Shown here: positions 1,315-61,174 of the stretch, one piece after another
How positions within the stretch are numbered: position 1 is the stretch's first letter
Layout of the letters: each line of letters starts with the position of its first letter
Assembly (NCBI RefSeq): GCF_000142905.1
Contig: NW_013657660.1
Span: forward strand, 210,056 to 274,055
Direction of reading: 5' to 3'
Origin: Thecamonas trahens ATCC 50062
Lineage: Eukaryota; Protista; Apusomonadida
DNA: 64,000 nucleotides
Position numbers and translations under genes: made by a program
Notes under the pieces: generated by a model
Databases searched by the model: none
What the model saw: only the letters and a program-made list of their open reading frames with translations
Told to the model about the DNA's origin: nothing

Positions 1315-2435
1315 CAGAGTCTGTGCCCGAGCCCGTGCCAGAGCCAGAGGTGACGGGCGTGACGGCCTTGGAGCCGTGGGCCGAGCTGGGCGCCGAAGAC
1401 GGCGTCGCGGGTTCGGCCAACACCGGCCCGGCCGACGGCAGCGGGACTGTGCCGACATCGTCGACGTCGCGGACAAACTCGTGCTCGAGCAGCTCGTGGA
1501 CTGAGGGGCGCTCGTCCGGGTTGATCATGAGGCAGCGCGAGAGAAAGTCTTGCGCGGCAGGCGAGATGTTGGTGGGGATGGCGACGGGCGTCTCGCGGTC
1601 CCAGTGCCTCACCAACGCCGCAAAGTTCTTGAGGTGCGGGTTGGGCGGCTTGCCCGAGAGCATCTCCAGCACTGTTGCGCCGAACGAGTAGATATCCGAC
1701 TTCATGCCGTAGCCCTTTTCCAGCACCACCTCGGGCGCCATCCACAGCGGGGTGCCCGTCACGGTGCCCGACATGTTCTCGCCCTGCGTCAGCTCTTCGA
1801 TCTCCTTGGAAGCGCCAAAGTCCGAGAGCTTGACAATGCCGTCGTTCGAGACAAGCACGTTGGCGCCCTTGATGTCGCGGTGCAGAATGTTGCACGAGTG
1901 CAGGTACGCGAGCCCCGTGAGGATCTGCCGCGCGTACACCTTCGTCAGGTCCTCCGGGAACGGGCCAAACTTGGAGAGCATTGACTCGACGGACCCGCCG
2001 GGCACATACTCCATAAACACAAACAGCACGTTGTCCTGAAAGTCCGTCCCCAGATACTTGACCACGTGCGGATGGTCGAGCTTGGACAGCAGCCGCACCT
2101 CCTTGATCACGTTGTTCACCCGCGACTTGTGCTCTGAAATGAGAATCTCCTTCACCGCCATCAGCTCGCCCGTATCGAGATGCAACCCGAGATAGACCGA
2201 ACAGAACGCGCCCTGGCCCAGCAAGTTGCCCTTCCGCCACCGGACCTTGGACACCGCCGTGAGGCCTGCAGAGCCCGACGCGCCTGCCGCGGCGGCTGCC
2301 TCGACCCCGCCCGTCTCCTTGGTCTCGTCGTCCTTGGCCTTGCGCTTCGACTTGGACTTGTGCTTGCTCTTCTCCTTCTCGCCATGGTGCTTGCTCTTCT
2401 TATGCTTCCGCTTCTTCTTCTCCTTCTCTTTCTCC
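785..2435 (-). CDS. STE11/MEKK-type MAP kinase kinase kinase with a C-terminal response-regulator receiver (REC) domain; last exon shown, upstream exon uncertain
   Basis: Kinase motifs WRKGNLLGQGAFCSVYLG, TGELMAVKEI, FMEYVPGGS, HRDIKGANVL, DFG and GTPLWMAPEV. The C-terminus reads FRVLVAD...FDLFCIDEKFP...IFTSA...DALISKP. The frame stays open upstream through a Lys-rich stretch to a TAG acceptor near 2436. A GTAAG donor near 2839 may supply exon 1 (ATG about 2960). Confidence 0.88.
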
Positions 2436-2483
2436 TATTTCCCACCGCACACACACACACACACACCAGCCACGCACCACAAC

Positions 2484-2532
2484 GAGTCAGCCACACAGTC
2501 AGCCACACAGTCAGCCACACAGTCAGCCACAC
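2484..2532. repeat. 12-bp tandem repeat (CAGTCAGCCACA, about 4 copies) in a probable intron
   Basis: gagtcagccacacagtcagccacacagtcagccacacagtcagccacac is directly visible, just after an (AC)n run. Confidence 0.85.
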
Positions 2533-3064
2533 CCACCACTGCCGCCCGCCCATAACCGGCTCTGGAGCAACCCCTCCCCTTCCCCTATGCTCCCATCCCA
2601 CCATCCATACTCCTACTCCCCACCATGCCCGCATCCACACCCACTCCCCCCTCCCTCCCACACCCACGCCCTCCCACACCCACGCCCTCCCCCAGCCAAG
2701 CCCAGCCGAGCCCAGCTCCAAAAAAGGCCTCCCAGTCTTCCCGCTGCTCGCCCCCCCCCCCTTACGTTTCCCGCCCCCTTCCTCCCTTGCACCCCCCCCC
2801 CCCCCTCCTCCTGCTCCACTGGCCCATCGAGCACCTTACCATCCTGCTCCTGCTCCTGCCCCTGAGCACCGTTGACGAGAGGTGCTGGCCGTACCCTTTC
2901 CCTGCTCCACACCCGCGCCCGCCTCGGAAGAAGGCCCCGTGCCGATCGATCACTCGGCATGCTGCCAGGCCGACCACTGCCACCACTGCACCACCGCCCC
3001 CACCCCCAACACACACACACACACACACATATATATATTTTATATATACCTCTCTCCCTCTCTC

Positions 3065-4741
3065 ATGGAGGCCTTGCAAACACGCAAGCGCCGCAGGGAG
3101 GAGCTTGGTCCGTCGGCCACGCCGTCAGCAGGCTCGTCGCCCTCGCCACGGACCTCGTCACAGGCCTCGCCCTCGCACCCAGCCGCGGCACGCCCTGTCA
3201 AGCGCGCGTGTCTGCTCCCGCAGTGGAAGCCAGGGTCAGTGGCACGAGCTGCAGTCGCTGCATCACCTCGAGCTACGGCGGCTAAGGTCCGTGTGCTGGT
3301 CGGCGAGGCAGTGGATGAGGTGCTGGCCATTGGCGAGACGGTCGTTCTGCCGGAGACGTCCGCCGGCCGCGGAGCAGCAGGCGCCACGGGCGGGCCGGTC
3401 CTCGGCCTCGCCTGGGCACCGCTGGAACCGGTAGTGGTGGCTGCAGTGGCGCCCGGAGGACTGGATCCGCCGGACGCGCCGATGAGTGCAGCCGCCAGCG
3501 CCGGCGCAGAGCTGCAGCTGTGGCGGGTGGGTGCGGTGAGCGCGAGCGGGGCCGAGAGCCTGGCGTGGGAGGCGACGGTGACGGTCGGCGGTGGCCCTGT
3601 CCGCGTCCTGGCGTTCTGCCCGTGTTCGGCCGGGCCGGGGCGGCTAGGTGTGCTGGCGACGGCGGGGAGCGATGGGCGGGTGAGGTTGTATGTGCTCCCG
3701 ACAGGGCTCACTGGCGAGGCCGCCCTCGAGCCGCTGGTGGAGATTGCGGTCGACGGTGTGGCGTTTACGTGTGTGGCATGGAGCGCGGCGTCGCTGTCAC
3801 TGGCGCTGCTGGCGCTGGGTGGGACGGACGGACGGATCTACGTGTACCAGATTCAGTCACTGTCCGAGGCTGCGGCGGCCGAGCCGCTGGTGGTCCTGCC
3901 CGGGCACGCGCAGGCAGTGATGGACCTCGACTGGGCGCCGCTGCAGTCGCCCGGCCTTGTAGCTGCGCGGTCGTTCCGATCTGGCGCACCGCTCCTAGCG
4001 TCGGCCGGATGGGATGGCGCCGTCAAGGTCTGGTCGCTGGCTGCGCCGCTGGAGGCGGCAGCGGTTGTGCAGCTCTCGTCGGTTCCCATCCGGACCATGC
4101 ACTGGCTTCCTGTGGTCCCGCCCAAGGCGAGCGGGGGCCGGGGGGCGGCAGCGGTGGCCGACGAGAGCATCGCCACGCTGCGGACTCAGATGCGGCTGAA
4201 GGATACATTTCTCTCGGGCGCCGGGCGGCACTTTGTGCCCGGCATGGCGGCGCAGCTGTCCGAGGCCTCGTCGCTGGGAATGGCGTCGCCGCTGCTGGTG
4301 GGCATAGAGAACGGATCCGTTCTCCTTGTTCACCTCGACTTTAGCGCCAAGAACTGGTCGCGCCAGTACAAGCACGATGCCGCTCTTGCCGAGCTGGCGG
4401 TCTCCGACGATGGCCTTGTGATGGCGCTGGCCGACTTTCGTGGGCGGACGGCGACGGTGGCGGGCGCGACGGCCGAGTCGGCCCGCGGCTGCGTCGCACA
4501 TCACGCTATCGCGAGCATTGTCGACACCGCCAGCAACTCTGTCCGCCTCGTCACTGGAGCCGCCGTCGCCCGCCTTTCCGTCCCGCTGCCTCCAACCCCG
4601 ATCTCCGTCGCCGAGTCTGCCAAATCGGTCGCCTTTGCCCCGACAGACCCGGACCAGCTCGGCGAGCCTCTGGCCGGGCACATGCTTGCCTCTGGCCTCG
4701 GTGCTGGCCTTCTTGTCATCCAGTGGCTGGCGCTGCCGTAA
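3065..4741 (+). CDS. GTF3C2: WD40-repeat protein, TFIIIC subunit 2 (GTF3C2/Tfc6)-like
   Basis: GGPVLGLAWAP, LQLWRV, VRVLAFCP..GRLGVLATAGSDGRVRLYVLP, GHAQAVMDLDWAP and LASAGWDGAVKVWSL. The RLGxLAxAxSDG block resembles GTF3C2 as I recall it. The ATG at 3065 follows a low-complexity intergenic stretch. Confidence 0.65.
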   Translation: MEALQTRKRRREELGPSATPSAGSSPSPRTSSQASPSHPAAARPVKRACLLPQWKPGSVARAAVAASPRATAAKVRVLVGEAVDEVLAIGETVVLPETSAGRGAAGATGGPVLGLAWAPLEPVVVAAVAPGGLDPPDAPMSAAASAGAELQLWRVGAVSASGAESLAWEATVTVGGGPVRVLAFCPCSAGPGRLGVLATAGSDGRVRLYVLPTGLTGEAALEPLVEIAVDGVAFTCVAWSAASLSLALLALGGTDGRIYVYQIQSLSEAAAAEPLVVLPGHAQAVMDLDWAPLQSPGLVAARSFRSGAPLLASAGWDGAVKVWSLAAPLEAAAVVQLSSVPIRTMHWLPVVPPKASGGRGAAAVADESIATLRTQMRLKDTFLSGAGRHFVPGMAAQLSEASSLGMASPLLVGIENGSVLLVHLDFSAKNWSRQYKHDAALAELAVSDDGLVMALADFRGRTATVAGATAESARGCVAHHAIASIVDTASNSVRLVTGAAVARLSVPLPPTPISVAESAKSVAFAPTDPDQLGEPLAGHMLASGLGAGLLVIQWLALP

Positions 4742-4939
4742 TTGACCGTCTTGGCCACATCATGAACAAACTCCCGGCCGATGTCTCTCTCTCTCTCTCC
4801 CCTCTCTCTCTGTGGCTGACGACCGGTTGAGCGACCAGCAGAGTGGTGGAGCAGGGCGAGCAAGAGCTTCGCTACGGCCAGGAGGGAAGGGGGCGGGACA
4901 GACGGCCTCAACCACACCCATCTCCAATACTACCCCACT

Positions 4940-6375
4940 ATGTTCCGGAGCCTCACCTCGACTGCTGCGCCGTCTGTGGCTGCTGCCACCGGCCAGGCCG
5001 CCCGCGGCTTTGCCGCAGCTGCCGCCGCCCGCCTCGACTTTGCTCTCTCCGAGGAGCAGCGGGCGCTGGACGACATGTCCAAGCAGTTTGCCCGCGAGGT
5101 CATCATCCCCGTGGCCGCCGAGCACGACCAGACCGGCGAGTACCCGTGGGAGGTTGTACGTTGGTGAAGGAAGGGGGGAGGGGGAGGGGGGGGGAGGGGG
5201 AGGGGGAGGGGGGGGGGGAGGAGAGGGAGACTCACTCTGCCGAAAACCAATGCGCAAACCGCCTCTGCCTGGCAATAACGCGACACACATATGCACCGCA
5301 CGACCGCTGCGTGTCACAGATCAAGCAGGCGCACGCGCTCGGTCTGATGAACCCGCACATTCCCGAGGCGTACGGCGGGCTTGGGCTCGGCGGCGTCGAG
5401 TCGTGCATCATTGCCGAGAACTTGGCGTACGGGTGCTCCGGCATCGGAACCGCCATCGAGGGCCCGGCGCTGGCCGAGGCGCCGATCATTGTGGGTGCGT
5501 CCGACGAGCAGAAGAAGAAGTACCTCGGCCGGATGACTGAGGAGCCGCTCATTGCCTCGTTTGCGGTGACTGAGCCCGGCGCAGGCTCGGATGTGGCCGG
5601 CGCCAAGACGACTGCGGTGAAGAAGGGTGACGACTGGGTCATCAACGGCTCCAAGATGTGGATCACCGGCGCCGGGCACGCCAACTGGATCTTTGTCCTC
5701 GCCCGTACCGATGCCAACGCCCGGACCGGTGCGGCCTTTACCGGCTTTATTGTCGATGGCGACACGCCTGGTGTCAACGTCGGCCGCAAGGAGGTGAACG
5801 TGGGCCAGCGCGCGTCGGACACCCGCGGCATCACCTTTGAGGACGTTGTCGTGCCTGACGCCAACCGCGTCGGCGCCGAGGGTTACGGCTTCAAGCTCGC
5901 CATGGCCGCCTTTGACATCACCCGCCCCGAGGTTGCATCGGGCGCGGTCGGCCTCGCTGACCGTGCCAAGGACGAGGCGCTTGCGTACTCGCTCGAGCGC
6001 AAGACCTTTGGCACCGAGATCTTCAACCACCAGGACGTCGCCTTCCGCATCGCCGACCTCGAGACCGGCGTCCAGCTCGGTCGCCTCATGGCCCGCCGCG
6101 CTGCCTGGGAGCTCGACCAGGGCCGCCCCTCGACCTACTACGCCTCCATGGCCAAGCGCCACGCCGGTGACCACGCCATGCACGCCGCATGCGAGGCTTG
6201 CTACATCTTTGGTGGCAACGGCTTCAACACCGAGTACCCCGTCGAGAAGCTCATGCGCGACGCCCGCATCTACTCCATCTACGAGGGCACCTCGGGCATC
6301 CAGCGGCTCAACGTCTCGCGCCTCATGCGCCGCGCTTTTGAGGCCGGTGCCAACCCCGGCGGCCCTGATGCCTAA
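4940..6375 (+). CDS. ACADM: Mitochondrial medium-chain acyl-CoA dehydrogenase (2 exons; intron 5156-5319)
   Basis: Transit-like N-terminus, then [30 protein letters not shown]|[25 protein letters not shown] and [29 protein letters not shown]. The GTACGT...CACAG intron joins the two frames cleanly. Confidence 0.93.
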
Positions 6376-13599: not shown

Positions 13600-13699
13600 N
13601 NNNNNNNNNNNNNNNNNNNNNNNNNNNNNNNNNNNNNNNNNNNNNNNNNNNNNNNNNNNNNNNNNNNNNNNNNNNNNNNNNNNNNNNNNNNNNNNNNNN
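13600..13699. other. Assembly gap (others at 21019-21118, 43033-43264, 53627-53726 and 60726-60825)
   Basis: Runs of N. Four of the five are flanked by long G- or C-homopolymer-rich tracts. Confidence 0.99.
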
Positions 13700-20856: not shown

Positions 20857-21418
20857 GGTGAGGGAATGGGCTGGCAGGAGGTGAGTTGGTATGGGGTGGA
20901 GGGTGGGGGTGGAGGGGGGTGGACGGGTGGCGGGGTGGGGTGGTCCACGCCAACCTCGGTGCGTCACCCTCGGTGGCTTGCCTGGCCCTCTGCCTCGCCC
21001 GGGAGGGGGGGGGGGGGANNNNNNNNNNNNNNNNNNNNNNNNNNNNNNNNNNNNNNNNNNNNNNNNNNNNNNNNNNNNNNNNNNNNNNNNNNNNNNNNNN
21101 NNNNNNNNNNNNNNNNNNCTGTGGACGTTGCGGGCCAAAGTGATCGGAGGCACTCCCTCTCCCTCCCTCTCTCTCCCTCCCCCTCCCCCCCCCTGGCACA
21201 CCACCTGTTCCTGGATGTCAGCACGGGATACACCACAGCCGCACGCAGGGGAGAGACATATAGGGAGGTGGTGCAGGTGCCTGAGGGGCGTGGGAATGGC
21301 TGCGGTGGGTCCTCTGTGCCCGGACACAGCCTCGCCCCCTACACACGCCTGCCCAGCTGCTGCCACCTTGCCCGCTCGCTCGGCGCCGACTCACCCAAAA
21401 ATTGCGGCGAGGAACGCA

Positions 21419-42905: not shown

Positions 42906-43342
42906 ATTGAAAGCAGCTTGATGAAGAGAGGTGTGAGTGTATATGTATGATTGTATGATTGTATGTATGGGAGGGAGGGGAGGGGGGGGGGGGGGGGAGC
43001 GCGCGCAGTGTAGTCGCCGACGGCCGGCCTCCNNNNNNNNNNNNNNNNNNNNNNNNNNNNNNNNNNNNNNNNNNNNNNNNNNNNNNNNNNNNNNNNNNNN
43101 NNNNNNNNNNNNNNNNNNNNNNNNNNNNNNNNNNNNNNNNNNNNNNNNNNNNNNNNNNNNNNNNNNNNNNNNNNNNNNNNNNNNNNNNNNNNNNNNNNNN
43201 NNNNNNNNNNNNNNNNNNNNNNNNNNNNNNNNNNNNNNNNNNNNNNNNNNNNNNNNNNNNNNNNCCCCACCCCCACCCTCCCCCCCACCCCCCCCCCCCC
43301 TACCCCACCCCCACCCCCCCCCCCACCCCCACCACGTTCCCC

Positions 43343-44818: not shown

Positions 44819-47800
44819 TTACTCGCCCGGGCTCCACACCACGCGCCGACCACGCTTCGCAGCCTGAACCCGCCGCGCGTACGTCAAAAGGCCGACCGTC
44901 CCACGTCCGCCTGCGCTGCTGGGCACCGCGATGCCGCTCCGCAGCCCGCCGTCGACCGCTGCCACGACTGCAGTCACAAGCTGTGGCGCACGTGCTTCTC
45001 CCAGCCCGTCTCCCGCCGTCGCACTTGCCACAACAGCCCGACGTTCTGCTGGGAGACGCTCGCTCTGCCGCGGGCCCACAGCCAGCGCTGTCGCGCCGTA
45101 CACAGCCAGCACTGCTGCTACCGGCAGAACGCCGCACGCCGCCGCCGCAACTGCAGCCACCCCACTCCATCGCGCTGCACGCAGTCGCCCGTCGTCACCG
45201 TATTCCTCAAGCACGTCCGCGGCGAGCGCCCACGACGCCCAAACCACCGAGGCGCTGACGGCAAAACGCACTGCGAGCATCGGCCCGACACAGCCGCCAG
45301 ACGCAAGCACGCCGGCCACCAGTGGCATCACGCTCGCCAGCGCTGCCCCATCGGCCCGGGTTGGAAACGACGCCGCTACTGCACCAACCGCAAGCGCGGC
45401 AACCGCGCCTGAAACGTCGCGGCCAAGCCCGATGCTAAGCGCGGCCAGACCCGCGAGCACACACGTTGTGCCTGCCATTGACACCACAGGCAGGATCCAC
45501 ATCGGCGCGCCTCGCGACGGCAGCAGATCCTTCAGCTTTCGCCCCTCGACAAGACCCAAGAACGTGCCAAAGCTCCACACAGAAATACATGCCAGCCCCA
45601 TCCACGGGACCGACCTCTGGAACCGCATTGCCAGCGCTCCAGCCCGGACCATTGACGCCAGCGCCACCCCCCACGACAAGCCGTGCAGCAAAATCTGTGC
45701 CGAGCGGACTCTCCGCAGTCTACCGGCATGTGCCAGGACGGCCACTACTCCGCACCAGCACAACCAGGCCGCGGTGAACGCAAAGCTTGCGTCAAACCTG
45801 AAAGCCGCTCCTGTCCGCCACGGCGCGCCCGGGTCAAGCCGCAGCGAGATCGGATGCAGGATGCACCCGGCCAGCCCGACAAAGAGCGTGTCAAAGTGTG
45901 CGTTGTCGCGATCTGTCACGCGGTCGCGCCCAAACACAAGCAGTGCCCAGTGAAACACGCCAATCGCGATCAGGAGCGTCGTGCACATCAACTCCGACGA
46001 GATAGCAGGCGGAACACACCACGGTGCCGCAACTGCCAAGCCAGACCAGACCACGTTCCCGGCGCTTGTCATTGCGGACCACGCCCAGCAGCCCAGCACG
46101 CTGCTCGTAGGACCGACCAGCGTGGCCCAGTCGAGCCATTCCACGAGCAACGTGACACTGCTTGGCACGCACTCGATCAGCTGCACAGGGACAAATGCCA
46201 GAACAAGCGCGCGAACGAGGCAGTACAGAGCTAGACCAAGGACAAGCCCCAAGGCCACCGCCGGCAGCAGCGGCCGCTGCATCCGCGACGCCCGCATGAG
46301 GAAGACCTGGCTTGACTCGACCAGCTGCTCAGAACGCTCCATCAGCACATCGATGCTCTCTCCGCGGTCCAACAAGTTGTCGATGTTGCTTAGCATGGCA
46401 TCCTGGACGCGAGCCACATCAGCTTCGGCTTGGAAAATCGAGCTGTTCTGGTTGTTGTCACGCCGCATCCGCCGCCGCCGCCGGCGTGCCGGTTGTGGCG
46501 GCGCGAGCTGGGGTCGCGTCTGTCCACCAAAACTTGCACTGCCTGCAGCACTCGCCATGTCGTCTTCCTCCGGAGCCGCCTCGCCGCCTTCTTCGTCGAC
46601 GATCGCGTAGCCGCCGCGTGGCGCTTGGGGTGCTGCCGACACGGACGAGCGTGATGCCCTTTTGCCAGGCCGCTTCTTCTTCTTCTCCTCCTTCCTGGGG
46701 GCCACCTGCCCTGCGTTGCGCGGCTGCGCAACTGGCCCCGAGGCCAGGCCACTCACCGGCGCCGACATTGGTGCATCGGCGACGGCGTGGGAGGCGAGCT
46801 GCTCGCGTTGCAACGCGCGTCGGCGCTCGTTGCGCTCATCGCGGACACAGAACACGTCAAGCGACCGCAACTCGGGCGCGTTTGCCTCGGTCTGTGCGAT
46901 GAGCCCGTCCAGAACCGAGATATCGGCGTCGGTCAGCATCAGCTCGTTGACCTCGACGCTGTCGCCGTCGTCGGTGCTTGCAGCAAGCGCCGACGAGAGC
47001 GTCGCGAGATCCAGCCGCTGTCGGCCATTGCTCCCGCTTGACTCGGCCATGTACAGCATGCCACCGGTCTCCGCTGCCGAAACTTGCGCGCCGCCGAGAC
47101 CACGCTCGGCCTCGCGCTCATTGCCCCGCAGACTGTGCCACTCGAGATACGGCAGCGGATCCTGGTACGATGCTGCGGTTGCATGCCAGGCTTCCAGATC
47201 GAGGACAGGACTACCCCACGCAAGCGACGATTCCTGGGTAGCCACCAGAGCCGTAAATGGCGAGACAAGACCGAACCGCAGCGCGAGATTCTCCAGCGGC
47301 CTGACCAGCGCTGCGGTCAGCCTCTGGTGCACGCCAGGATCCACATCGAGAAGGCCGTGCTCCCAGTCGCTAATGAGCGCCGCAGCCGCCAGCGCATGCA
47401 CTGTCCGCCCGCGGGTGAATGACAGCGGCTGAGTGTAAACAACCTCGTGAAAGGCGTCGCCGTCGGGCGTCTGCCCACGAAGCGATGCACGGATGCAGTA
47501 GTCAACAAAGCCATAGACCACCACAGGCTCGCCCTCAAAGATCGCACCCATCACCCGGGGTGACTGAAGCAGACCGATGGCATTGTCACCAGCGGTCTCC
47601 GTGGTCTGGTGCCACTCAACCGCAACGTTGCGGAGCGAGCGAGCAAAGCCGCGCCGCGCTTGCCGCGCCAGTTGAGTCCGCCACAGCGACGACGTTGCCG
47701 TGTCCAGCACCTCGCCGGCCCCACCGCCGGCCAGCGCGGGCGCGAGGACCGAGCCGCTCCGCCCGGGCGCCACATCAAAGCCGACGCCGAGGACGCGGAG

Positions 47801-50760
47801 CCGTGAGGCCTGCGGCGTTGCCAGCACCGCAAGCGCAGCCACAACATCGCGGGCGTGCCCGTTCGAGATCCACACCACAGTTGTCGGTACGCCCGGGGCT
47901 AGTGCGCGCGGCGAGCCCAAAGCCACCACGCCGGCTAGGACTGGCGCCAGCGCCACCGGCTTGCTCCCCGGCGCCTGTGCCCTCGCGAGCGGGACAAGAG
48001 AGCTCGACGCGGCATGGACCAGCTGCTGCACCGTGTTCGGGCCAAGCGCCAGCGGCTGCGGCGTGATCCACGCCGGGCACCGACCCTCCGCGCCCGCCAT
48101 GACCAGCTCGACGAGCGCGGCCTTGCCGGATGTCACCGCCTCAGCCTGCAGCGCCTCTAGCATGAGCAGGACCGCGGGCTCTATCTTGTCACCAAGCGAG
48201 GCGTCGAGGGCAAGAACAAAGTGTGCGTGCGCAACCGCGCCCGCTCGGGTCTCGTCGGCGACCCAGTCATCGTCGTCAAATCGCGGATAGAACGCAAGCA
48301 GCGCGGCGCGGTGACGGCTTGAATCGTCGAGCTCTTCCACCCACATCCGCGGCGCGTGTGCCTGCTCGCACGAGACCGTCACCCAGAGGTCACCGTCAGC
48401 CCAGCTCCCTGCGTCCGGCGGCGATGCCACCACCAGCTTGGACGCGGTCTGTTTGGCCACCGCAAAGTGCGGCGAGGCGCTCACGTCGCGAATCGGATAC
48501 TGGCTCTCAAAGGCGAGAAGCAGCCGCGGCGGGGCTCTGGTTGTGGGAAAGAGCGAACTCGGCAGAGTCAGCCTCACCGCATCACTGGTCTGCTCCAGTT
48601 CCTGGACCCACTCGATGCGGACAAAGACGCTCGTCGACGGCGCAACTGCGCCGAGCTCCATCCGAAACTCGCGTGCAGCCTGGGCGTCATCGTCGGCTTG
48701 CAGCAGCATCGAGGCTTGGCCTGCAGCCTGCGCGGCTGTATGCGCTGCGCGCGCCGCACCTTTGCGCTTGACACTTGAGACCAGGAGCCGGTCGCCGATC
48801 TGGGCCTGGAAGCCCACAACCGCCGCTGACCCTGCCGCAGCCAGTGGAAAGACAAACGCGCTAGTCAACGCCCTTCTCGTTGTGTTGGTGTAGTGGAGGA
48901 GTAGCTCAAAGCTCCCGACCATGTCCACCACCGTGCCAGAGAGACTGGCACCAGCGCAGACAAGGCTGACTCCCGACGTTGTCACAACTCCGGCGCAGGA
49001 GGTTGGCGGGGCCGACGGCAGCTGCCACGGAATTCCGACCACATGCGAGGCCGATATCGGGCGGAGCGGCGAGGTGGCGCTGACCAGCTCGAGCGGCGGC
49101 GGCCCGACGCTGCCGTCGATCTGGGCCTGTGTCCATGACGTGGCATGCGGGTGCACAGATGCATGCTGGGCAGCGCGGATGGCCTTGACCACATCCGGAT
49201 GACTGCCGATGCCCGAGCCGACAGCCAGACCACAATCGACAGCCGTCGCAACCTGGACTGCGACGACGGCAGCGAGCGAGAGAGCCGACTCATCGAAAAC
49301 GGCCCAGAACTCGTCTTGGAACGCGGTGGCTACCAGGCTCGACGCCGACGACGCGACAGCATGGACTGCGGCGACGCCGAGGTGGGCATACTCGCCTGGC
49401 TGGGCAACCTGCGCCACACGCGAAGCCGAGAGCGAGAACACAGCAATCCAACGCGAAGTTCCCTTGATCGGGAGCTGCGGCAGTCTTGACACGAGGCTGG
49501 GGGCGGCCCACGGCTGCGAGGAGCGAAGCGCCGCCTGCAGCGCCGCCGCCGCCGACCCAAACCCGTAGAGCCCATCGCCGAGGGCCGGGACCGAGCCTGG
49601 GCCGAGCGCAGCTTCCAGCGCGGCGCGCGAGTGCGCAGCACGGGCGTTGCCGCCAACGAGCGAAAAGATCTGCAGCTCGTTGAGCGGGACGTAGATACGG
49701 GTGGTGTTCAAATCGCCGGCACTCTGCGCCTCGCAAAAGACGGCGCGCGGAACGACCCAGAGCGGGGTGTCGGCCGACTCACTTGCGGTACTCCGCAGAT
49801 CAGGGTACTCGGGAATGAACCGACGATTGAGCGAGAGTGAGGCAGTCGCCGAATCGCCATACGACTCAGCGGCGGTCTGAATCGTCTGCCGCGCACGCGT
49901 GCACGCAGTGCTTGCCAGCTGGTGCGGAGGCGCCGAGTCGCCGAAAAACTCATCAGCATCATCATCAGCAGTGCTCGGGAGCCACGTCTCCCACCCAGCA
50001 GCAGCCACCAGCTCGACTGCTCGCCGCGAGGTGAGCGGTTCGAGGTGGAGCTGGACAGGAAAGCCGCGAGGCGGCGCGTTGGAATCGACGCCGCGCGGCA
50101 GGACGGCGTCAGCAGTAGCGTACGCCTCGAGGAGCAGCTCTTGCGACGCGACAAAAGCGTCGCGGGCAAGCATGCTTCCAGCAAAGACATCGCCTGGCAC
50201 GACATGCGCCATGACCGCGCGGCCGTCCCATGCCGCGGTGTACTCGGAGGCAAGATCTTGGATATCAGCCGACGGCGCAGAGGCGAGGCGGGCTAGCGCC
50301 GATGAAATTGCTCCCAGTTTAGAGTACCCCAGCTCTCGCAGCGACGGGAGAGTATACTCGACATCAGTAACAAGCGATGGATACAGCGCGGCGTCAAGGC
50401 CGTGGTAGCCCGCCCTGCGGAGAGCGGCCCGAGAGGCCGGTCGGGCCGCCAGGCGAGACGAGCCGAGGAGCGGCGAGACCGGATCCAGACATGGGACCAT
50501 GCCTTCTGCAAAGACATCAGCACAGACCTTGGCAAACACTGCCCGCGCGTCTGCCGGAGAGGCACACGGATGGACGGCCTCGACCGGCTGACGGGCCAGC
50601 ACCTCGGCTTCGACAACGGCTGCTGTCACCGCCGCCAGCGGCGCTGCCGACACCACGACGGCCAGGCCGGCCTCTGCATCCTCCACCACCTCAACCGCGA
50701 CTATCCGCGAGTTTCCGACAAAAACGCGATACGCCCACCCGCAGGGAGGGTGTTGGCCAT
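44819..50760 (-). CDS. PARP4/vault-PARP-like protein (degenerate ART, VIT, vWA-like) fused to an R-SNARE motif and a multipass TM tail; start uncertain
   Basis: VIT domain HYTNTTRRALTSAFVFPL...AAVVGFQAQIGDR. PARP4-like blocks PRMWVE, VVYGFVDYCIRASL, VHALAAAALISDWEHGLL..LVSPFTALVA and LPYLEW. Synaptobrevin-like VQDAMLSNIDNLLDRGESIDVLMERSEQL. All in one uninterrupted ORF. Confidence 0.72.
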
Positions 50761-50957
50761 GACTTGCGGTGGTGAGCAGAGAGAAGGGTGCTGTCGTACA
50801 GGGTTTGGGAGCTTTGGAATTTTTGGTGAGCAATGGAAAGGCGGCCGTTGGCCACGGAAGGAAGGAAACAAGGCGTATGAATGCATGTGTGTATGTACGC
50901 GTGTGCGCGCGCGCGCGTGTTTGTGTGTGCATGTATGTACCACGGGTTCGCAGACAA

Positions 50958-51767
50958 CTACTTGGGCGGTGCAGATGGCGGCGAGTACGGCGGCGGAGCT
51001 TCGCCACCGTTCGGATCGGCGGACGGATGAGCTGCCGGAAAGGCGGACGGATGAGCTGCGGGGGGCGGGATTGGGTCGGCAGGGTACGGCACGGCCGGGG
51101 GGGCAGGCGCGGGGTAGGCGACGGCGGCAGCAGGTGCAGGGTACGAGGCCTGCTTGGGGCGGTGGTTCGGGTCGACGGCGACTGCAACGCCGCCAACACC
51201 ACCGGGTGATTGATGGAACGGCGGCGGGGCGGGCGCCGCCACAGCACCAGGCTCGGCCGCCGCGCCGGTGTAGTGGATGCGACGGGCCTCATCGCGCATG
51301 CGGGTGATCTCGTTGACCCACCACTCGGCGTGGTAGACGACGACGGCAAAGTGGAACTTCTTGCCCTCCCACGATGAATCGTGCGGCGGCGTGGCGGCGG
51401 TGTAGATACCGGCGACATCGACTAATGCCATGCCCTTGCAGCAGCAGCAGCAGAGACACATGTCATCGTTTGTTTTGCCATCGCGCCACGCGTTGGCGAC
51501 GGCGACCGTGTCGATGTACGCCGCCGGGACCTCAAAGTGAGGAATGGTGACCGGCGTGCACCCCGTTGCTGTCATCCGCAGGCCGACCTTGTAGTCCGAG
51601 GTAAGGTAGAGGTACCCGTTGGTCCCGAGCTCCTTGGACTGGAAGAACCGCTTCTTGATGTTGAATCTGCCTGCTCCCACCGCCGTATGCGCCACGATGT
51701 TCAACGACTGCGCCGCGCTCGGCGTCGGGCCGGCCTTCTTGTTGATGCAGCAAGCACAGTTTCCCAT
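50958..51767 (-). CDS. Hypothetical lipid-anchored protein (MGNCACC N-terminus, Cys cluster, Pro-rich tail with PPPY)
   Basis: ATG at 51767 follows an AC microsatellite. The product has a globular-looking core, MCLCCCCCKG and a C-terminal APPPYSPP. Confidence 0.7.
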   Translation of the reverse strand: MGNCACCINKKAGPTPSAAQSLNIVAHTAVGAGRFNIKKRFFQSKELGTNGYLYLTSDYKVGLRMTATGCTPVTIPHFEVPAAYIDTVAVANAWRDGKTNDDMCLCCCCCKGMALVDVAGIYTAATPPHDSSWEGKKFHFAVVVYHAEWWVNEITRMRDEARRIHYTGAAAEPGAVAAPAPPPFHQSPGGVGGVAVAVDPNHRPKQASYPAPAAAVAYPAPAPPAVPYPADPIPPPAAHPSAFPAAHPSADPNGGEAPPPYSPPSAPPK

Positions 51768-53626: not shown

Positions 53627-53740
53627 NNNNNNNNNNNNNNNNNNNNNNNNNNNNNNNNNNNNNNNNNNNNNNNNNNNNNNNNNNNNNNNNNNNNNNNNNN
53701 NNNNNNNNNNNNNNNNNNNNNNNNNNGCCCCACCTCAGCC

Positions 53741-60369: not shown

Positions 60370-61174
60370 CTATCCGTTGCGCCACTGGTGGCCGCACTCG
60401 GAGCACTTGTAGAACTCGGTCATTGGCTCGTCTGCAGACCGAATCTGGATCGTCATAAAGTACGCCTGGTTGTTGTCGCACTTTTCACAGTCGACTGTTG
60501 TCGTGCCCCAGTGCCACCACACCCAGCCCCATCAGCCACACCATCACCAACAACCCATGAGTCTCCGCGACACACACATACGCACGCACACACACATACG
60601 CACACACACCACACACCACCACACCACCACACCACAAACACCCTAGTCAACTACCCATCGCCATTCCATCGCCATCCCATCACCCCAGATCCACCTTCCC
60701 CCCCCCCCTCCTCGTCCATGATCCCNNNNNNNNNNNNNNNNNNNNNNNNNNNNNNNNNNNNNNNNNNNNNNNNNNNNNNNNNNNNNNNNNNNNNNNNNNN
60801 NNNNNNNNNNNNNNNNNNNNNNNNNCCCCCCCTCCCCCTCCGTCCCACTGACTCCCGTCGGTCCCACCCCCCCCCACCCCACCACACACACCCCCTCCCC
60901 CCCACCCCCCACCCCTTTTCCGCCCCCTCCTCCTTCTGTCTAACAGGTAGCACGTACCCTGGGTGGTGCCAACGTTCTCCCAGGCCGAGTCGCCCAGGAC
61001 GTCGTCGACTTCCTTGTGAGTCAGCTCGATGGCTTCGGTGTAGCGACGGACGCAATGGTACACATACGTGCACGTCCTGCACACAAACACCGTGTTGGTT
61101 GCGTGTGCCATCCCGCCGTCATGCACACCGTCCTCGGCTACAAGCATGTTGGCGCATGTCGGGCAGAACAACAT
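60370..61174 (-). CDS. POLR3K: RNA polymerase III subunit C11 (exons 61174-60958 and 60494-60370)
   Basis: MLFCPTCANML..FVCRTCTY..KEVDDVLG..AWENV joins VDCEKCDNNQAYFMTIQIRSADEPMTEFYKCSECGHQW. The GTACGT...CAG intron spans a gap. Confidence 0.93.

What the first reader, a model, noticed from the sequence alone, without database searches (positions are those of the whole stretch)
44819..50700. Vault-PARP (PARP4)-like protein fused to an R-SNARE and a multipass membrane domain
Seen in one stop-free frame: an ART-like region, a VIT domain (about 48960-48595), vWA-like and PARP4-like blocks, and a disordered linker. These are followed by a synaptobrevin-type coiled coil with a zero-layer Arg (VARVQDAMLSNIDNLLDRGESIDVLMERSEQLVESSQVF, about 46445-46275). 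A TM helix follows directly, then roughly 450 aa of further hydrophobic helices. Known: animal PARP4 is soluble and ends in an MVP-binding domain, and R-SNAREs normally end at their single TM helix. Inference: the vault-interaction tail has been replaced by a membrane-fusion and membrane-anchoring module. That would link a PARP4-type scaffold to vesicle traffic, a combination I have not seen described.
Basis: partly seen in the sequence, partly recalled or inferred. Interest (0 to 1): 0.8.

Follow-up and report, generated by a model that had tools for sequence, protein, structure and literature searches.

The report
Membrane-anchored PARP4 paralogue with R-SNARE
One gene of the protist Thecamonas trahens joins a fast-evolving, probably inactive copy of the vault enzyme PARP4 to a complete vesicle-fusion (R-SNARE) helix, its membrane anchor and an orphan multi-pass membrane tail. 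Related PARP4 proteins in other organisms also carry SNARE pieces, so this is an unusual membrane-bound variant of a known family.

Summary
Window 44819-50700 (minus strand) is one stop-free exon of Thecamonas trahens gene AMSG_04661 (1967 aa).

What the protein contains:
- A degenerate ART remnant.
- A VIT-vWA "ITIH-like" core that is collinear with human PARP4 (E 3.9e-33).
- A linker of about 225 residues.
- A VAMP7-like R-SNARE motif (Pfam 2.6e-11) with the zero-layer Arg and all 15 flanking layers.
- A TM helix, then 454 residues of hydrophobic helices with no relative in 1.84 billion proteins.

The gene is a very divergent paralogue. The genome also has a canonical PARP4, four MVP loci and six ordinary longin R-SNAREs.

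The PARP4 plus SNARE-motif combination is not unique. Oyster, clam and sponge PARP4s carry SNARE motifs without a TM helix, among other "guest" modules such as actin, ubiquitin, 14-3-3 and HSP70 pieces. One amoebozoan-like transcript contig encodes a PARP4 with a SNARE motif and a C-terminal TM anchor. Only the two TM-anchored proteins lack the vault-docking MINT domain.

Most likely this is a membrane-anchored PARP4-derived scaffold whose SNARE motif pairs with Q-SNAREs. Expression, SNARE pairing and any vault link are untested. It is a new variant of a known kind, of moderate to high interest. The scan had not found this architecture on other DNA.

The parts
50739..50760 (-). Annotated exon 1 (ATG at 50760, 7 codons plus 1 nt) of AMSG_04661. 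It is followed by a 38-nt GT-AG intron at 50701-50738.
   Evidence: P0001 starts with 7 residues that are not in the long frame. They are encoded at 50760 in another frame, and GT...AG borders are visible. The start is uncertain: no transcript data were available.
49661..50700 (-). N-terminal region (P0001 8-354) with no assignable domain.
   Evidence: No Pfam hit at E up to 10. No paralogue in its own genome. It is not aligned to the PARP4 BRCT, WGR or HD domains in alignment A2. The codon score favours this frame, but GC3 is lower here.
49247..49660 (-). Degenerate ADP-ribosyltransferase (ART) remnant (P0001 355-492).
   Evidence: A BLASTP alignment to the genome's canonical PARP4 runs through it. 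In alignment A2, His365 and Tyr386 occupy the H and Y columns, about 19 residues between them are deleted, and the catalytic Glu column holds Phe472. There is no Pfam PARP hit. hhalign is not significant. AF2 pLDDT here is about 35-78.
48611..48943 (-). VIT domain (P0001 594-704).
   Evidence: Pfam PF08487, E 2.2e-13, 50.8 bits. It aligns to human PARP4 residues 597-754. AF2 pLDDT is 78-94.
47123..48610 (-). Remainder of the ITIH-like region: a vWA-like fold (about P0001 820-1010, MIDAS reduced to D-A-S-L-G) and the post-vWA PARP4 block (to about 1200).
   Evidence: phmmer to human PARP4 971-1219, domain E 1.2e-18. BLASTP to Thecamonas PARP4 gives 1e-59 over residues 381-1198. The AF2 model gives a Foldseek top hit to ITIH1 (6fpy), E 2e-27, TM-score 0.61. 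There is no Pfam VWA hit. MIDAS columns were read from A2.
46448..47122 (-). Low-complexity, charged linker (P0001 1201-1425) that ends in an Arg run just before the SNARE motif.
   Evidence: Translation. No Pfam hit. It is stop-free, against 1-3 stops in the other frames. The codon score is as high as in the core, 0.19-0.29.
46277..46447 (-). R-SNARE motif (P0001 1426-1482). The zero-layer Arg is R1453 (46364-46366). Layers -7 to +8 read I A V V M N L R I L S L S F A M.
   Evidence: Pfam PF00957, 2.6e-11. PDB sequence hits: Nyv1 4e-5, VAMP4 and VAMP7. A local R-SNARE HMM gives 65 bits. Alignment A1. The nearest R-SNARE in its own genome is the longin at G000:C53.
46184..46273 (-). First transmembrane helix (P0001 1484-1513). 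It follows the SNARE motif through a short linker, R-P-L-L-P, that holds two prolines.
   Evidence: Kyte-Doolittle 19-mer maximum of 2.5. It aligns with the TM helices of ordinary R-SNAREs.
44822..46183 (-). Orphan polytopic tail (P0001 1514-1967) with about 11-13 further hydrophobic segments. The stop codon is at 44819-44821.
   Evidence: Hydropathy. It is stop-free with 0 of 20,000 shuffles matching. The ORF frame gives the best codon score down to 45119. There is no relative in 1.84 billion representatives, none in its own genome, and none in Pfam or the Atlas. Single-sequence AF2 gives all helices at pLDDT 45.

Best explanation
This is one real gene of Thecamonas trahens (AMSG_04661). It encodes a lineage-specific, fast-evolving paralogue of vault PARP (PARP4).

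Shown by the tools:
- The protein keeps the ITIH-like VIT-vWA interaction scaffold.
- It keeps only a remnant of the ART fold: His and Tyr are retained, the catalytic Glu column holds Phe, and one loop is deleted.
- No BRCT, helical/regulatory or MVP-docking MINT domain was detected.
- Through a disordered linker of about 225 residues, the scaffold is joined to a complete VAMP7-like R-SNARE (all 16 layers, TM helix directly behind) and to a 454-residue orphan polytopic tail.

Inferred mechanism:
- The protein is inserted into the membrane co-translationally, with the whole PARP4-like part in the cytosol.
- The SNARE helix pairs with endosomal or plasma-membrane Q-SNAREs. This places or holds the scaffold on a particular trafficking membrane.
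- With a 1400-residue N-terminal load, prolines in the juxtamembrane linker and a polytopic anchor, it probably acts as a SNARE-binding adaptor or regulator rather than a dedicated fusogen.
- The VIT-vWA platform then binds a partner that is still unknown.
- It is the membrane-bound extreme of a habit seen across the PARP4 family: carrying copies of interaction modules of abundant cytosolic proteins behind the core.
For: Single gene:
- One stop-free frame; the public model is 100% identical to it.
- The coding signature continues through the linker and tail, down to 45119, the last window scored.
- Stop statistics favour a maintained frame, and there are no gaps in the gene.

PARP4 descent:
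- Human PARP4, E 3.9e-33, collinear.
- 191 bits to the genome's canonical PARP4, against 73 and 59 bits to other VIT-vWA proteins of the same genome.
- ITIH1-like fold, E 2e-27.

Degenerate enzyme:
- No Pfam PARP hit; His and Tyr kept, Glu replaced by Phe, loop deleted.
- No MINT domain.

Real R-SNARE:
- Pfam above the cut-off and PDB SNARE hits.
- A full layer pattern with Arg in the only invariant column.
- The TM helix is adjacent.
- It is the only one of the genome's seven TM-anchored R-SNAREs without a longin domain.

Family context:
- SNARE motifs occur in PARP4s of an oyster, a clam, a sponge and an environmental eukaryote.
- A second PARP4 with a SNARE motif and a C-terminal TM anchor sits on a transcript-like contig.
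- Among about 120 PARP4 relatives, only the two TM-bearing proteins lack MINT where tested.
- Appended 14-3-3, actin and ubiquitin domains were already noted by Perina et al. 2014 (PMC4245714).
Against: - No transcript or protein evidence was accessible. The start codon and the 38-nt intron are only a gene model.
- The tail and the first 350 residues have no relatives anywhere, a lower GC3 and a weaker codon score.
- The core lies on an extreme branch, and the MIDAS and ART motifs are degenerate. This could mean relaxed constraint.
- No second species with the same architecture was found.
- No partner of the VIT-vWA scaffold is known.
Confidence: 0.5

Rival explanations
1. Bait or handle reading. 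The SNARE motif is one more 'guest module' of the PARP4 family, like the actin, ubiquitin, 14-3-3, HSP70 and ribosomal P-tail pieces in other PARP4s. Its job would be to attract whatever binds R-SNAREs, whether host Q-SNAREs and their regulators or foreign proteins that target SNAREs. It would not serve membrane traffic. The TM helix and tail would be by-products of capturing a whole R-SNARE gene.
For: - Guest modules are widespread behind the PARP4 core, and they sit between the core and MINT, so they are not merged neighbouring genes.
- SNARE motifs of at least two types occur in five other PARP4s.
- In P0120 the motif lies about 100 residues from the TM helix, which is not a fusogenic geometry.
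- The Thecamonas juxtamembrane linker holds two prolines.
- A paper titled 'Rapid Evolution of PARP Genes Suggests a Broad Role for ADP-Ribosylation in Host-Virus Conflicts' holds the terms PARP4 and positive selection (PMC4038475, seen but not read).
Against: - In Thecamonas the motif and TM arrangement matches that of an authentic R-SNARE, unlike the TM-less copies.
- The ART domain is degenerate, so captured partners could not be modified.
- The motif is old and divergent (39 bits to the nearest R-SNARE of its own genome), not a fresh copy.
- No function of any guest module has been tested.
Confidence: 0.2
2. Vault-to-membrane tether. The PARP4-like scaffold still binds vaults or vault cargo, and the SNARE and TM module fixes them to a trafficking membrane.
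For: - The genome has four MVP loci, so vaults probably exist.
- Vaults bind ER and nuclear-envelope membranes in Dictyostelium, and no membrane-binding motif is known for them (PMC13100048).
- The two TM-anchored PARP4-family proteins are exactly the ones that lack MINT.
Against: - MINT is the only mapped vault-docking element (PMC12280208), and it is undetectable here.
- The canonical Thecamonas PARP4 lacks it too, so the logic of a 'replacement' is untestable.
- The scaffold is extremely divergent.
- No TROVE/TEP1 was found in the genome.
Confidence: 0.12
3. Gene-model artefact. The long frame is not translated as one chain. Either separate transcripts exist for the PARP4-like half and the SNARE/TM half, or the real product stops soon after the first TM helix through an unrecognised splice, so that the tail is a read-through shadow.
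For: - No expression data could be consulted.
- The tail is an orphan with a weaker codon signal, and the last 200 codons have GC3 below GC1.
- The stop codon lies 6 nt from the stop of the convergent neighbour.
- In-frame Met codons precede the SNARE motif.
Against: - The upstream half has no stop of its own in 1960 codons.
- The linker has a strong coding score.
- The tail is stop-free, against 2-13 stops in the other frames, and 0 of 20,000 shuffles match this.
- There is no assembly gap in the gene.
- An independent transcript-like contig from another organism encodes a PARP4 with a SNARE motif and a TM anchor on a single contig, apart from one apparent frameshift inside the VIT domain, upstream of those modules.
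Confidence: 0.13
4. A decaying or neutrally drifting duplicate with no maintained function.
For: - An extreme branch length.
- Lost catalytic Glu, incomplete MIDAS motif, and no Pfam VWA or PARP hits.
Against: - Only 27% identity to its paralogue, yet it remains open for 5.9 kb in a genome where other frames collect 19-47 stops over the same stretch.
- The ITIH-like fold is still predicted with pLDDT of mostly 75-94.
- All 16 SNARE layers are intact.
Confidence: 0.05

Closest known systems
PARP4 / vault PARP (clade 5 PARPs; human structures 9bw6, 9bw7, 8sx1)
   Same: - The ITIH-like VIT-vWA-post-vWA region is collinear (E 3.9e-33).
- The position of the ART remnant just upstream of VIT is the same.
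- The nearest relative in its own genome is the canonical PARP4.
   Different: - No BRCT, WGR or HD domains.
- ART is degenerate (Glu replaced by Phe, loop deleted).
- MIDAS is incomplete.
- No MINT domain.
- It carries an R-SNARE, a TM helix and a polytopic tail.
- It is predicted to be an integral membrane protein rather than a soluble vault-lumen protein.
PARP4-like proteins with appended 14-3-3, actin or ubiquitin domains (Perina et al. 2014, PMC4245714), plus the SNARE-motif-bearing PARP4s found here (P0003, P0136, P0052, P0129)
   Same: Extra modules copied from abundant cytosolic proteins are inserted behind the ITIH-like core. A Synaptobrevin-type motif is among them.
   Different: - Those proteins keep an active-looking ART domain and the C-terminal MINT domain, and their SNARE motifs have no TM helix.
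- The Thecamonas protein has the motif with its own TM helix and no MINT.
P0120 / L027: environmental, amoebozoan-like BRCT-PARP-VIT-vWA-14-3-3-SNARE-TM transcript contig (JGI 3300016959)
   Same: A PARP4-family protein with an R-SNARE motif, a C-terminal TM anchor and no MINT domain.
   Different: - It has a canonical ART domain and a 14-3-3 module.
- Its single TM helix lies about 100 residues after the motif, and the protein ends there.
- It has no polytopic tail.
- Its SNARE motif is no closer to the Thecamonas one than ordinary R-SNAREs are, so the acquisition looks independent.
Longin R-SNAREs (VAMP7 / Nyv1 type)
   Same: - A SNARE motif with the full heptad layers and a zero-layer Arg.
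- A TM helix directly behind it.
- The best solved-structure matches are Nyv1, VAMP4 and VAMP7.
   Different: - No longin domain; a 1400-residue PARP4-like region takes its place.
- Prolines in the linker.
- 454 residues follow the TM helix, whereas ordinary R-SNAREs end within about 10-15 residues of it. All six ordinary R-SNAREs of this genome are longins.
Tomosyn / Lgl-type regulators (large scaffold plus a C-terminal R-SNARE motif)
   Same: A big non-SNARE scaffold precedes an R-SNARE motif. This fits a regulatory, non-fusogenic role. The genome has its own tomosyn-like gene (G000:C10).
   Different: Tomosyn is a soluble WD40 propeller protein without a TM helix. Here the scaffold is PARP4-derived and the protein is membrane-embedded.
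PARP16 (PARP with a C-terminal transmembrane region)
   Same: A PARP-family protein held in a membrane by a C-terminal TM region (mentioned in PMC4245714).
   Different: PARP16 belongs to another clade. It is small, has no VIT-vWA scaffold and no SNARE motif, and has a single TM helix.

Membership tests
PARP4 / vault PARP (clade 5) | ART catalytic domain (Pfam PF00644) with the H-Y-E triad | tested here: not met
   No PF00644 hit, even on the isolated N-terminal piece at E up to 10. Alignment A2 shows His365 and Tyr386 kept, the Glu column holding Phe472, and a deletion of about 19 residues. hhalign is not significant.
PARP4 / vault PARP (clade 5) | ITIH-like region: VIT plus vWA plus post-vWA block, collinear with PARP4 | tested here: met
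   VIT, 2.2e-13. Three collinear stretches against human PARP4, 3.9e-33. 1e-59 against the genome's canonical PARP4. ITIH1 is the Foldseek top hit, 2e-27. Caveat: there is no Pfam VWA hit, and MIDAS reads D-A-S-L-G.
PARP4 / vault PARP (clade 5) | N-terminal BRCT / WGR / helical regulatory domains | tested here: not met
   No Pfam hit in P0001 1-587. These residues are unaligned in A2.
PARP4 / vault PARP (clade 5) | C-terminal MVP-interaction (MINT) domain | tested here: not met
   A profile built from 76 PARP4 C-termini hits oyster, Capsaspora and Acanthamoeba proteins (1e-21 to 1e-42) but not P0001. It does not hit the canonical Thecamonas PARP4 either.
PARP4 / vault PARP (clade 5) | Association with vault particles | not testable with these tools
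   Four MVP loci are present.
R-SNARE (Synaptobrevin, PF00957) | SNARE motif scoring above the Pfam gathering threshold | tested here: met
   43.6 bits against a cut-off of 26.4. 50.1 bits in the six-frame genome scan.
R-SNARE (Synaptobrevin, PF00957) | Arg at the zero layer and hydrophobic heptad layers -7 to +8 | tested here: met
   R1453 lies in the only invariant column of alignment A1. The layers read I A V V M N L R I L S L S F A M. The layer register is taken from my own knowledge of VAMP2.
R-SNARE (Synaptobrevin, PF00957) | A single C-terminal TM helix directly after the motif, with a very short luminal end (tail-anchored) | tested here: not met
   The TM helix follows directly, but 454 further residues with about 11-13 hydrophobic segments come after it.
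R-SNARE (Synaptobrevin, PF00957) | Assembly into a four-helix bundle with Qa, Qb and Qc SNAREs | not testable with these tools
Longin R-SNARE (VAMP7 / Sec22 / Ykt6) | N-terminal longin domain (PF13774) | tested here: not met
   No Longin hit in P0001. All six ordinary R-SNAREs of the genome have one.
Secreted ITIH / VWA5A-type VIT-vWA proteins | Closest kinship to non-PARP VIT-vWA proteins, with a signal peptide | tested here: not met
   59-73 bits to the genome's other VIT-vWA proteins, against 191 bits to its PARP4. The N-terminal hydrophobic stretch is flanked by acidic residues, with no basic n-region (my reading of the sequence).

The most novel reading that the evidence does not exclude
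PARP4-family proteins may be modular carriers of interaction 'handles' copied from abundant cell proteins: actin, ubiquitin, 14-3-3, HSP70, the ribosomal P tail and R-SNARE motifs. The Thecamonas protein, and independently the environmental protein P0120, would be membrane-anchored versions in which a TM anchor stands where the vault-docking MINT domain sits in other PARP4s. These could be the missing physical link between the vault/PARP4 system and endomembranes, or a membrane-resident bait for factors that attack SNAREs.
Probability: 0.15. Interest if true: 0.85.

Novelty: new variant of a known kind. Interest (0 to 1): 0.55.

Why it matters
Vault function is still unsolved. Vaults have recently been seen bound to ER and nuclear-envelope membranes, with no known membrane-binding element (PMC13100048). 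A PARP4-derived scaffold that is itself an integral membrane R-SNARE, together with a second, independent TM-anchored PARP4, gives a concrete and testable candidate for how PARP4-type scaffolds meet membranes.

The work also draws attention to a largely undescribed feature of the family: arrays of copied host-protein modules behind the PARP4 core in many non-vertebrate lineages. For SNARE biology, this would be a rare R-SNARE with a giant non-longin N-terminal domain and a polytopic anchor, and so a natural experiment on how much load a SNARE motif tolerates.

If the gene model fails, the value is limited to annotation.

Tried and rejected
- Rfam scan of the window: nothing.
- HMMER search of 1.84 billion representatives with the SNARE motif plus tail: only the protein itself and ordinary short R-SNAREs that match the motif and TM helix.
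- Word searches: the full-length query gave only the protein itself plus two canonical PARP4s. The C-terminus of P0120 gave only itself.
- Two metagenome scans, one with the Thecamonas junction and one with the P0120 C-terminus: no relatives.
- Own-genome searches with the tail and with the N-terminal 587 residues: only the gene itself.
- Pfam on the isolated N-terminus, linker and tail: nothing.
The second gave no usable hit.
- Single-sequence AF2 model of the SNARE motif plus tail: pLDDT 45, so no fold search was run on it.
- hhalign of the N-terminus against a PARP4 catalytic profile: not significant.
- Maximum-likelihood tree of the ITIH-like core: the protein sits on a 7.2 substitutions/site branch and cannot be placed.
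- MINT profile against the window, the canonical PARP4 locus and its downstream DNA: nothing.
- TROVE/TEP1 search of the genome: no match.
- Rejected idea: the plus-strand ORF 44931-45953 as a real gene. It is antisense to the tail, and the minus-strand ORF frame outscores every plus-strand frame in each window there.
- Rejected idea: the N-terminal hydrophobic stretch as a signal peptide. It has acidic flanks.

Full report
**Identity and gene model**

The window has 60-69% G+C. Its minus strand holds a 2199-codon open frame at 44819-51418. A word search returned AMSG_04661 of Thecamonas trahens ATCC 50062 (P0001, 1967 aa) at 100% identity. This confirms the organism named in earlier scan notes.

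P0001 equals the long frame from window 50700 downward. It adds a 7-codon first exon (ATG at 50760) and a 38-nt GT-AG intron. The first 230 codons of the raw frame are not coding in that frame: GC2 exceeds GC3 and the codon score is negative.

I did not build the spliced product myself. All window-based searches used the single large exon by reference, or the database protein P0001. The 7-residue first exon was not searched, and the joined step was left out.

**Is it one coding sequence?**

From about 50800 to 45119, the last window scored, the ORF frame has the best codon-usage log-odds of all six frames. This includes the linker (0.19-0.29 per codon) and the hydrophobic tail (0.09-0.14 against -0.05 or lower for the other frames).

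The 1960-codon exon has no stop, while the other five frames have 19-47. The 488-codon tail has none, against 2-13 in the other frames. None of 20,000 mononucleotide shuffles of the tail, and only 16 of 20,000 position-wise shuffles, are stop-free.

There is no assembly gap in the gene. The nearest N runs are 43033-43264 and 53627-53726. The upstream half has no stop codon of its own, so translation must run into the SNARE motif unless an unrecognised splice intervenes. No transcript data could be consulted, and that remains the main weakness.

**The PARP4-like half**

- Pfam finds VIT (2.2e-13).
- phmmer against PDB sequences finds human PARP4 at 3.9e-33 in three collinear stretches: chain residues 597-754, 784-867 and 971-1219.
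- The genome holds a canonical PARP4 at G000:C63 with PARP_reg, PARP, VIT and VWA domains.
- P0001 aligns to that canonical PARP4 over residues 381-1198 (1e-59, 27% identity).
- P0001 scores 191 bits against it, versus 73 and 59 bits against the other VIT-vWA proteins of the genome.
- An AF2 model of residues 300-1210, built with a 30-sequence alignment, has pLDDT of mostly 75-94 through the VIT-vWA region. Its best PDB match is ITIH1 (6fpy, E 2e-27, TM-score 0.61). This is the 'ITIH-like region' described for PARP4 in PMC10450202.

The enzyme part is only a remnant:
- There is no Pfam PARP hit.
- In the alignment, His365 and Tyr386 sit in the H and Y columns, about 19 residues between them are missing, and the catalytic Glu column holds Phe472.
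- The MIDAS motif reads D-A-S-L-G.
- No BRCT, WGR or HD domain is detectable.
- A MINT profile built from 76 PARP4 C-termini does not match.
- In a maximum-likelihood tree the protein sits on a branch of 7.2 substitutions per site and cannot be placed.

**The SNARE half**

Pfam Synaptobrevin scores 43.6 bits against a cut-off of 26.4. The best solved relatives are Nyv1, VAMP4 and VAMP7.

In an alignment with ordinary R-SNAREs the only invariant column is the Arg, R1453. The sixteen layer positions read I A V V M N L R I L S L S F A M (the register comes from my knowledge of VAMP2). A strongly hydrophobic helix follows after R-P-L-L-P.

The genome has six ordinary R-SNAREs, all with a longin domain, plus a tomosyn-like gene. 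This protein is therefore the only longin-less, TM-anchored R-SNARE in the genome. Its motif is old: it scores 39 bits against the nearest R-SNARE of its own genome, and no better against SNARE motifs embedded in other PARP4s.

**The tail**

After the first TM helix come 454 residues with about 11-13 hydrophobic segments and no internal repeat. The tail has no relative in any source I could search:
- none among 1.84 billion cluster representatives;
- none in its own genome;
- none in Pfam or in the Atlas feature search.

A single-sequence AF2 model is all-helical but unreliable, with pLDDT 45. Its origin is unexplained.

**Context that changes the reading**

Searching with the canonical Thecamonas PARP4 returned 822 relatives. 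Among the best 120, many non-vertebrate PARP4s carry extra Pfam families behind the core:

| Extra family | Proteins among the best 120 |
|---|---|
| actin | about 30 |
| ubiquitin | about 31 |
| 14-3-3 | 17 |
| HSP70 | 11 |
| ribosomal P tail | 6 |
| Synaptobrevin | 5 |

I verified several of these directly:
- The oyster protein P0003 is a full PARP4 (E 4.6e-250). It has an actin piece at 1326-1383, a VAMP2-like motif at 1431-1482, an Hsc70 substrate-binding piece at 2130-2266 and MINT at 2308-2466.
- Dysidea P0052 and Ruditapes P0129 have ubiquitin, a SNARE motif and MINT.
- These embedded SNARE motifs have no TM helix.

Perina et al. 2014 had noted the 14-3-3, actin and ubiquitin additions. 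My three paper searches that paired PARP4 with synaptobrevin, SNARE or 'integrated decoy' found no paper describing a PARP4-SNARE protein.

One more case resembles Thecamonas. P0120 lies on a 6283-nt contig with AATAAA near its 3' end. Together with the overlapping upstream reading frame, it encodes BRCT-PARP_reg-PARP-VIT-vWA-14-3-3-SNARE motif and a terminal TM helix with hydropathy 3.2. It groups with Acanthamoeba and Balamuthia PARP4.

In a scan of about 120 PARP4 relatives, only P0001 and P0120 have a convincing TM helix, and both lack MINT.

**Vault parts in the genome**

There are four MVP loci, no TROVE/TEP1 match, and a canonical PARP4 in which MINT is also undetectable. 'Replacement of the vault-binding tail' therefore cannot be demonstrated in this organism.

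Recent cryo-tomography shows vaults bound to ER and nuclear-envelope membranes in Dictyostelium, with no known membrane-binding motif (PMC13100048). MINT is the mapped docking element (PMC12280208).

**Interpretation**

- Shown: the architecture, the PARP4 descent, the degenerate ART and MIDAS motifs, the intact SNARE layers with an adjacent TM helix, the orphan tail, and the occurrence of SNARE motifs and one TM anchor in other PARP4s.
- Inferred: the cytosolic orientation of the scaffold, pairing with Q-SNAREs, and a targeting or regulatory role rather than a fusogenic one. The last point rests on the proline linker, the large N-terminal load and the polytopic anchor.
- Rivals: a bait or handle role for the motif, a vault-membrane tether, a gene-model artefact, and neutral decay.

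**Verdict**

This is a new variant within the PARP4 family, found so far in a single species and without expression evidence. It is made more interesting by the family-wide guest modules and by a second, independent membrane-anchored PARP4.

Noticed in passing
P0003, P0136, P0052, P0129, P0070, P0044, P0002 (proteins): Canonical PARP4 orthologues of oysters, clams, sponges, Capsaspora, Amoebozoa and others carry short copies of host proteins between the ITIH-like core and the MINT domain. The copies include the actin N-terminus, ubiquitin, 14-3-3, the HSP70 substrate-binding domain, the ribosomal P-protein tail, VAMP SNARE motifs, WH2, EF-hands and FG repeats. None of the vertebrate PARP4 rows among the 120 listed has them. 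Only 14-3-3, actin and ubiquitin appear in the passages of Perina et al. 2014 that I read.
   Followed up: partly
L027:3-6181 (JGI 3300016959, Ga0186580_100137): A transcript-like contig encodes BRCT-PARP_reg-PARP-VIT-vWA-14-3-3-R-SNARE motif and a C-terminal TM helix. It is split into two overlapping called genes (3-2126 and 2066-6181) by an apparent frameshift inside the VIT domain. The source organism is unknown; the protein groups with Acanthamoeba and Balamuthia PARP4.
   Followed up: partly
G000:C63 (L018:3673-9912:+): The canonical Thecamonas PARP4 (PARP_reg, PARP, VIT, VWA; 2080-codon frame) has about 730 residues after the core with no Pfam hit and no detectable MINT domain, although the genome has four MVP loci (C52, C46, C40, C9) and no TROVE/TEP1 match.
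   Followed up: partly
G000:C10 (L019:1012-4290:+): A tomosyn-like gene: WD40 propeller hits plus a C-terminal TM-less R-SNARE motif (Synaptobrevin, 9e-7).
   Followed up: partly
G000:C53, C47, C44, C6, C32, C8 (L009-L014): All six ordinary TM-anchored R-SNAREs of the genome have a longin domain. No short 'brevin' was seen, so the PARP4-like protein is the only longin-less TM-anchored R-SNARE.
   Followed up: partly
Their 3' UTRs must therefore overlap.
   Followed up: no
window 44931-45953 (+): A 340-codon ATG-started ORF lies antisense to the hydrophobic tail. In each window there the minus-strand ORF frame outscores every plus-strand frame, so this looks like a shadow ORF of a GC-rich coding region.
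   Followed up: partly
window 13600-13699, 21019-21118, 43033-43264, 53627-53726, 60726-60825: Five runs of N (scaffold gaps) in the window. None touches the gene studied.
   Followed up: no
G000:C5 (L025:1306-4509:-): A UBA-VIT-vWA protein. An earlier scan note reports half a Qc-SNARE motif in a protein of that architecture. I assumed L025 is that protein, and Pfam shows no SNARE family in it at E up to 0.01.
   Followed up: partly
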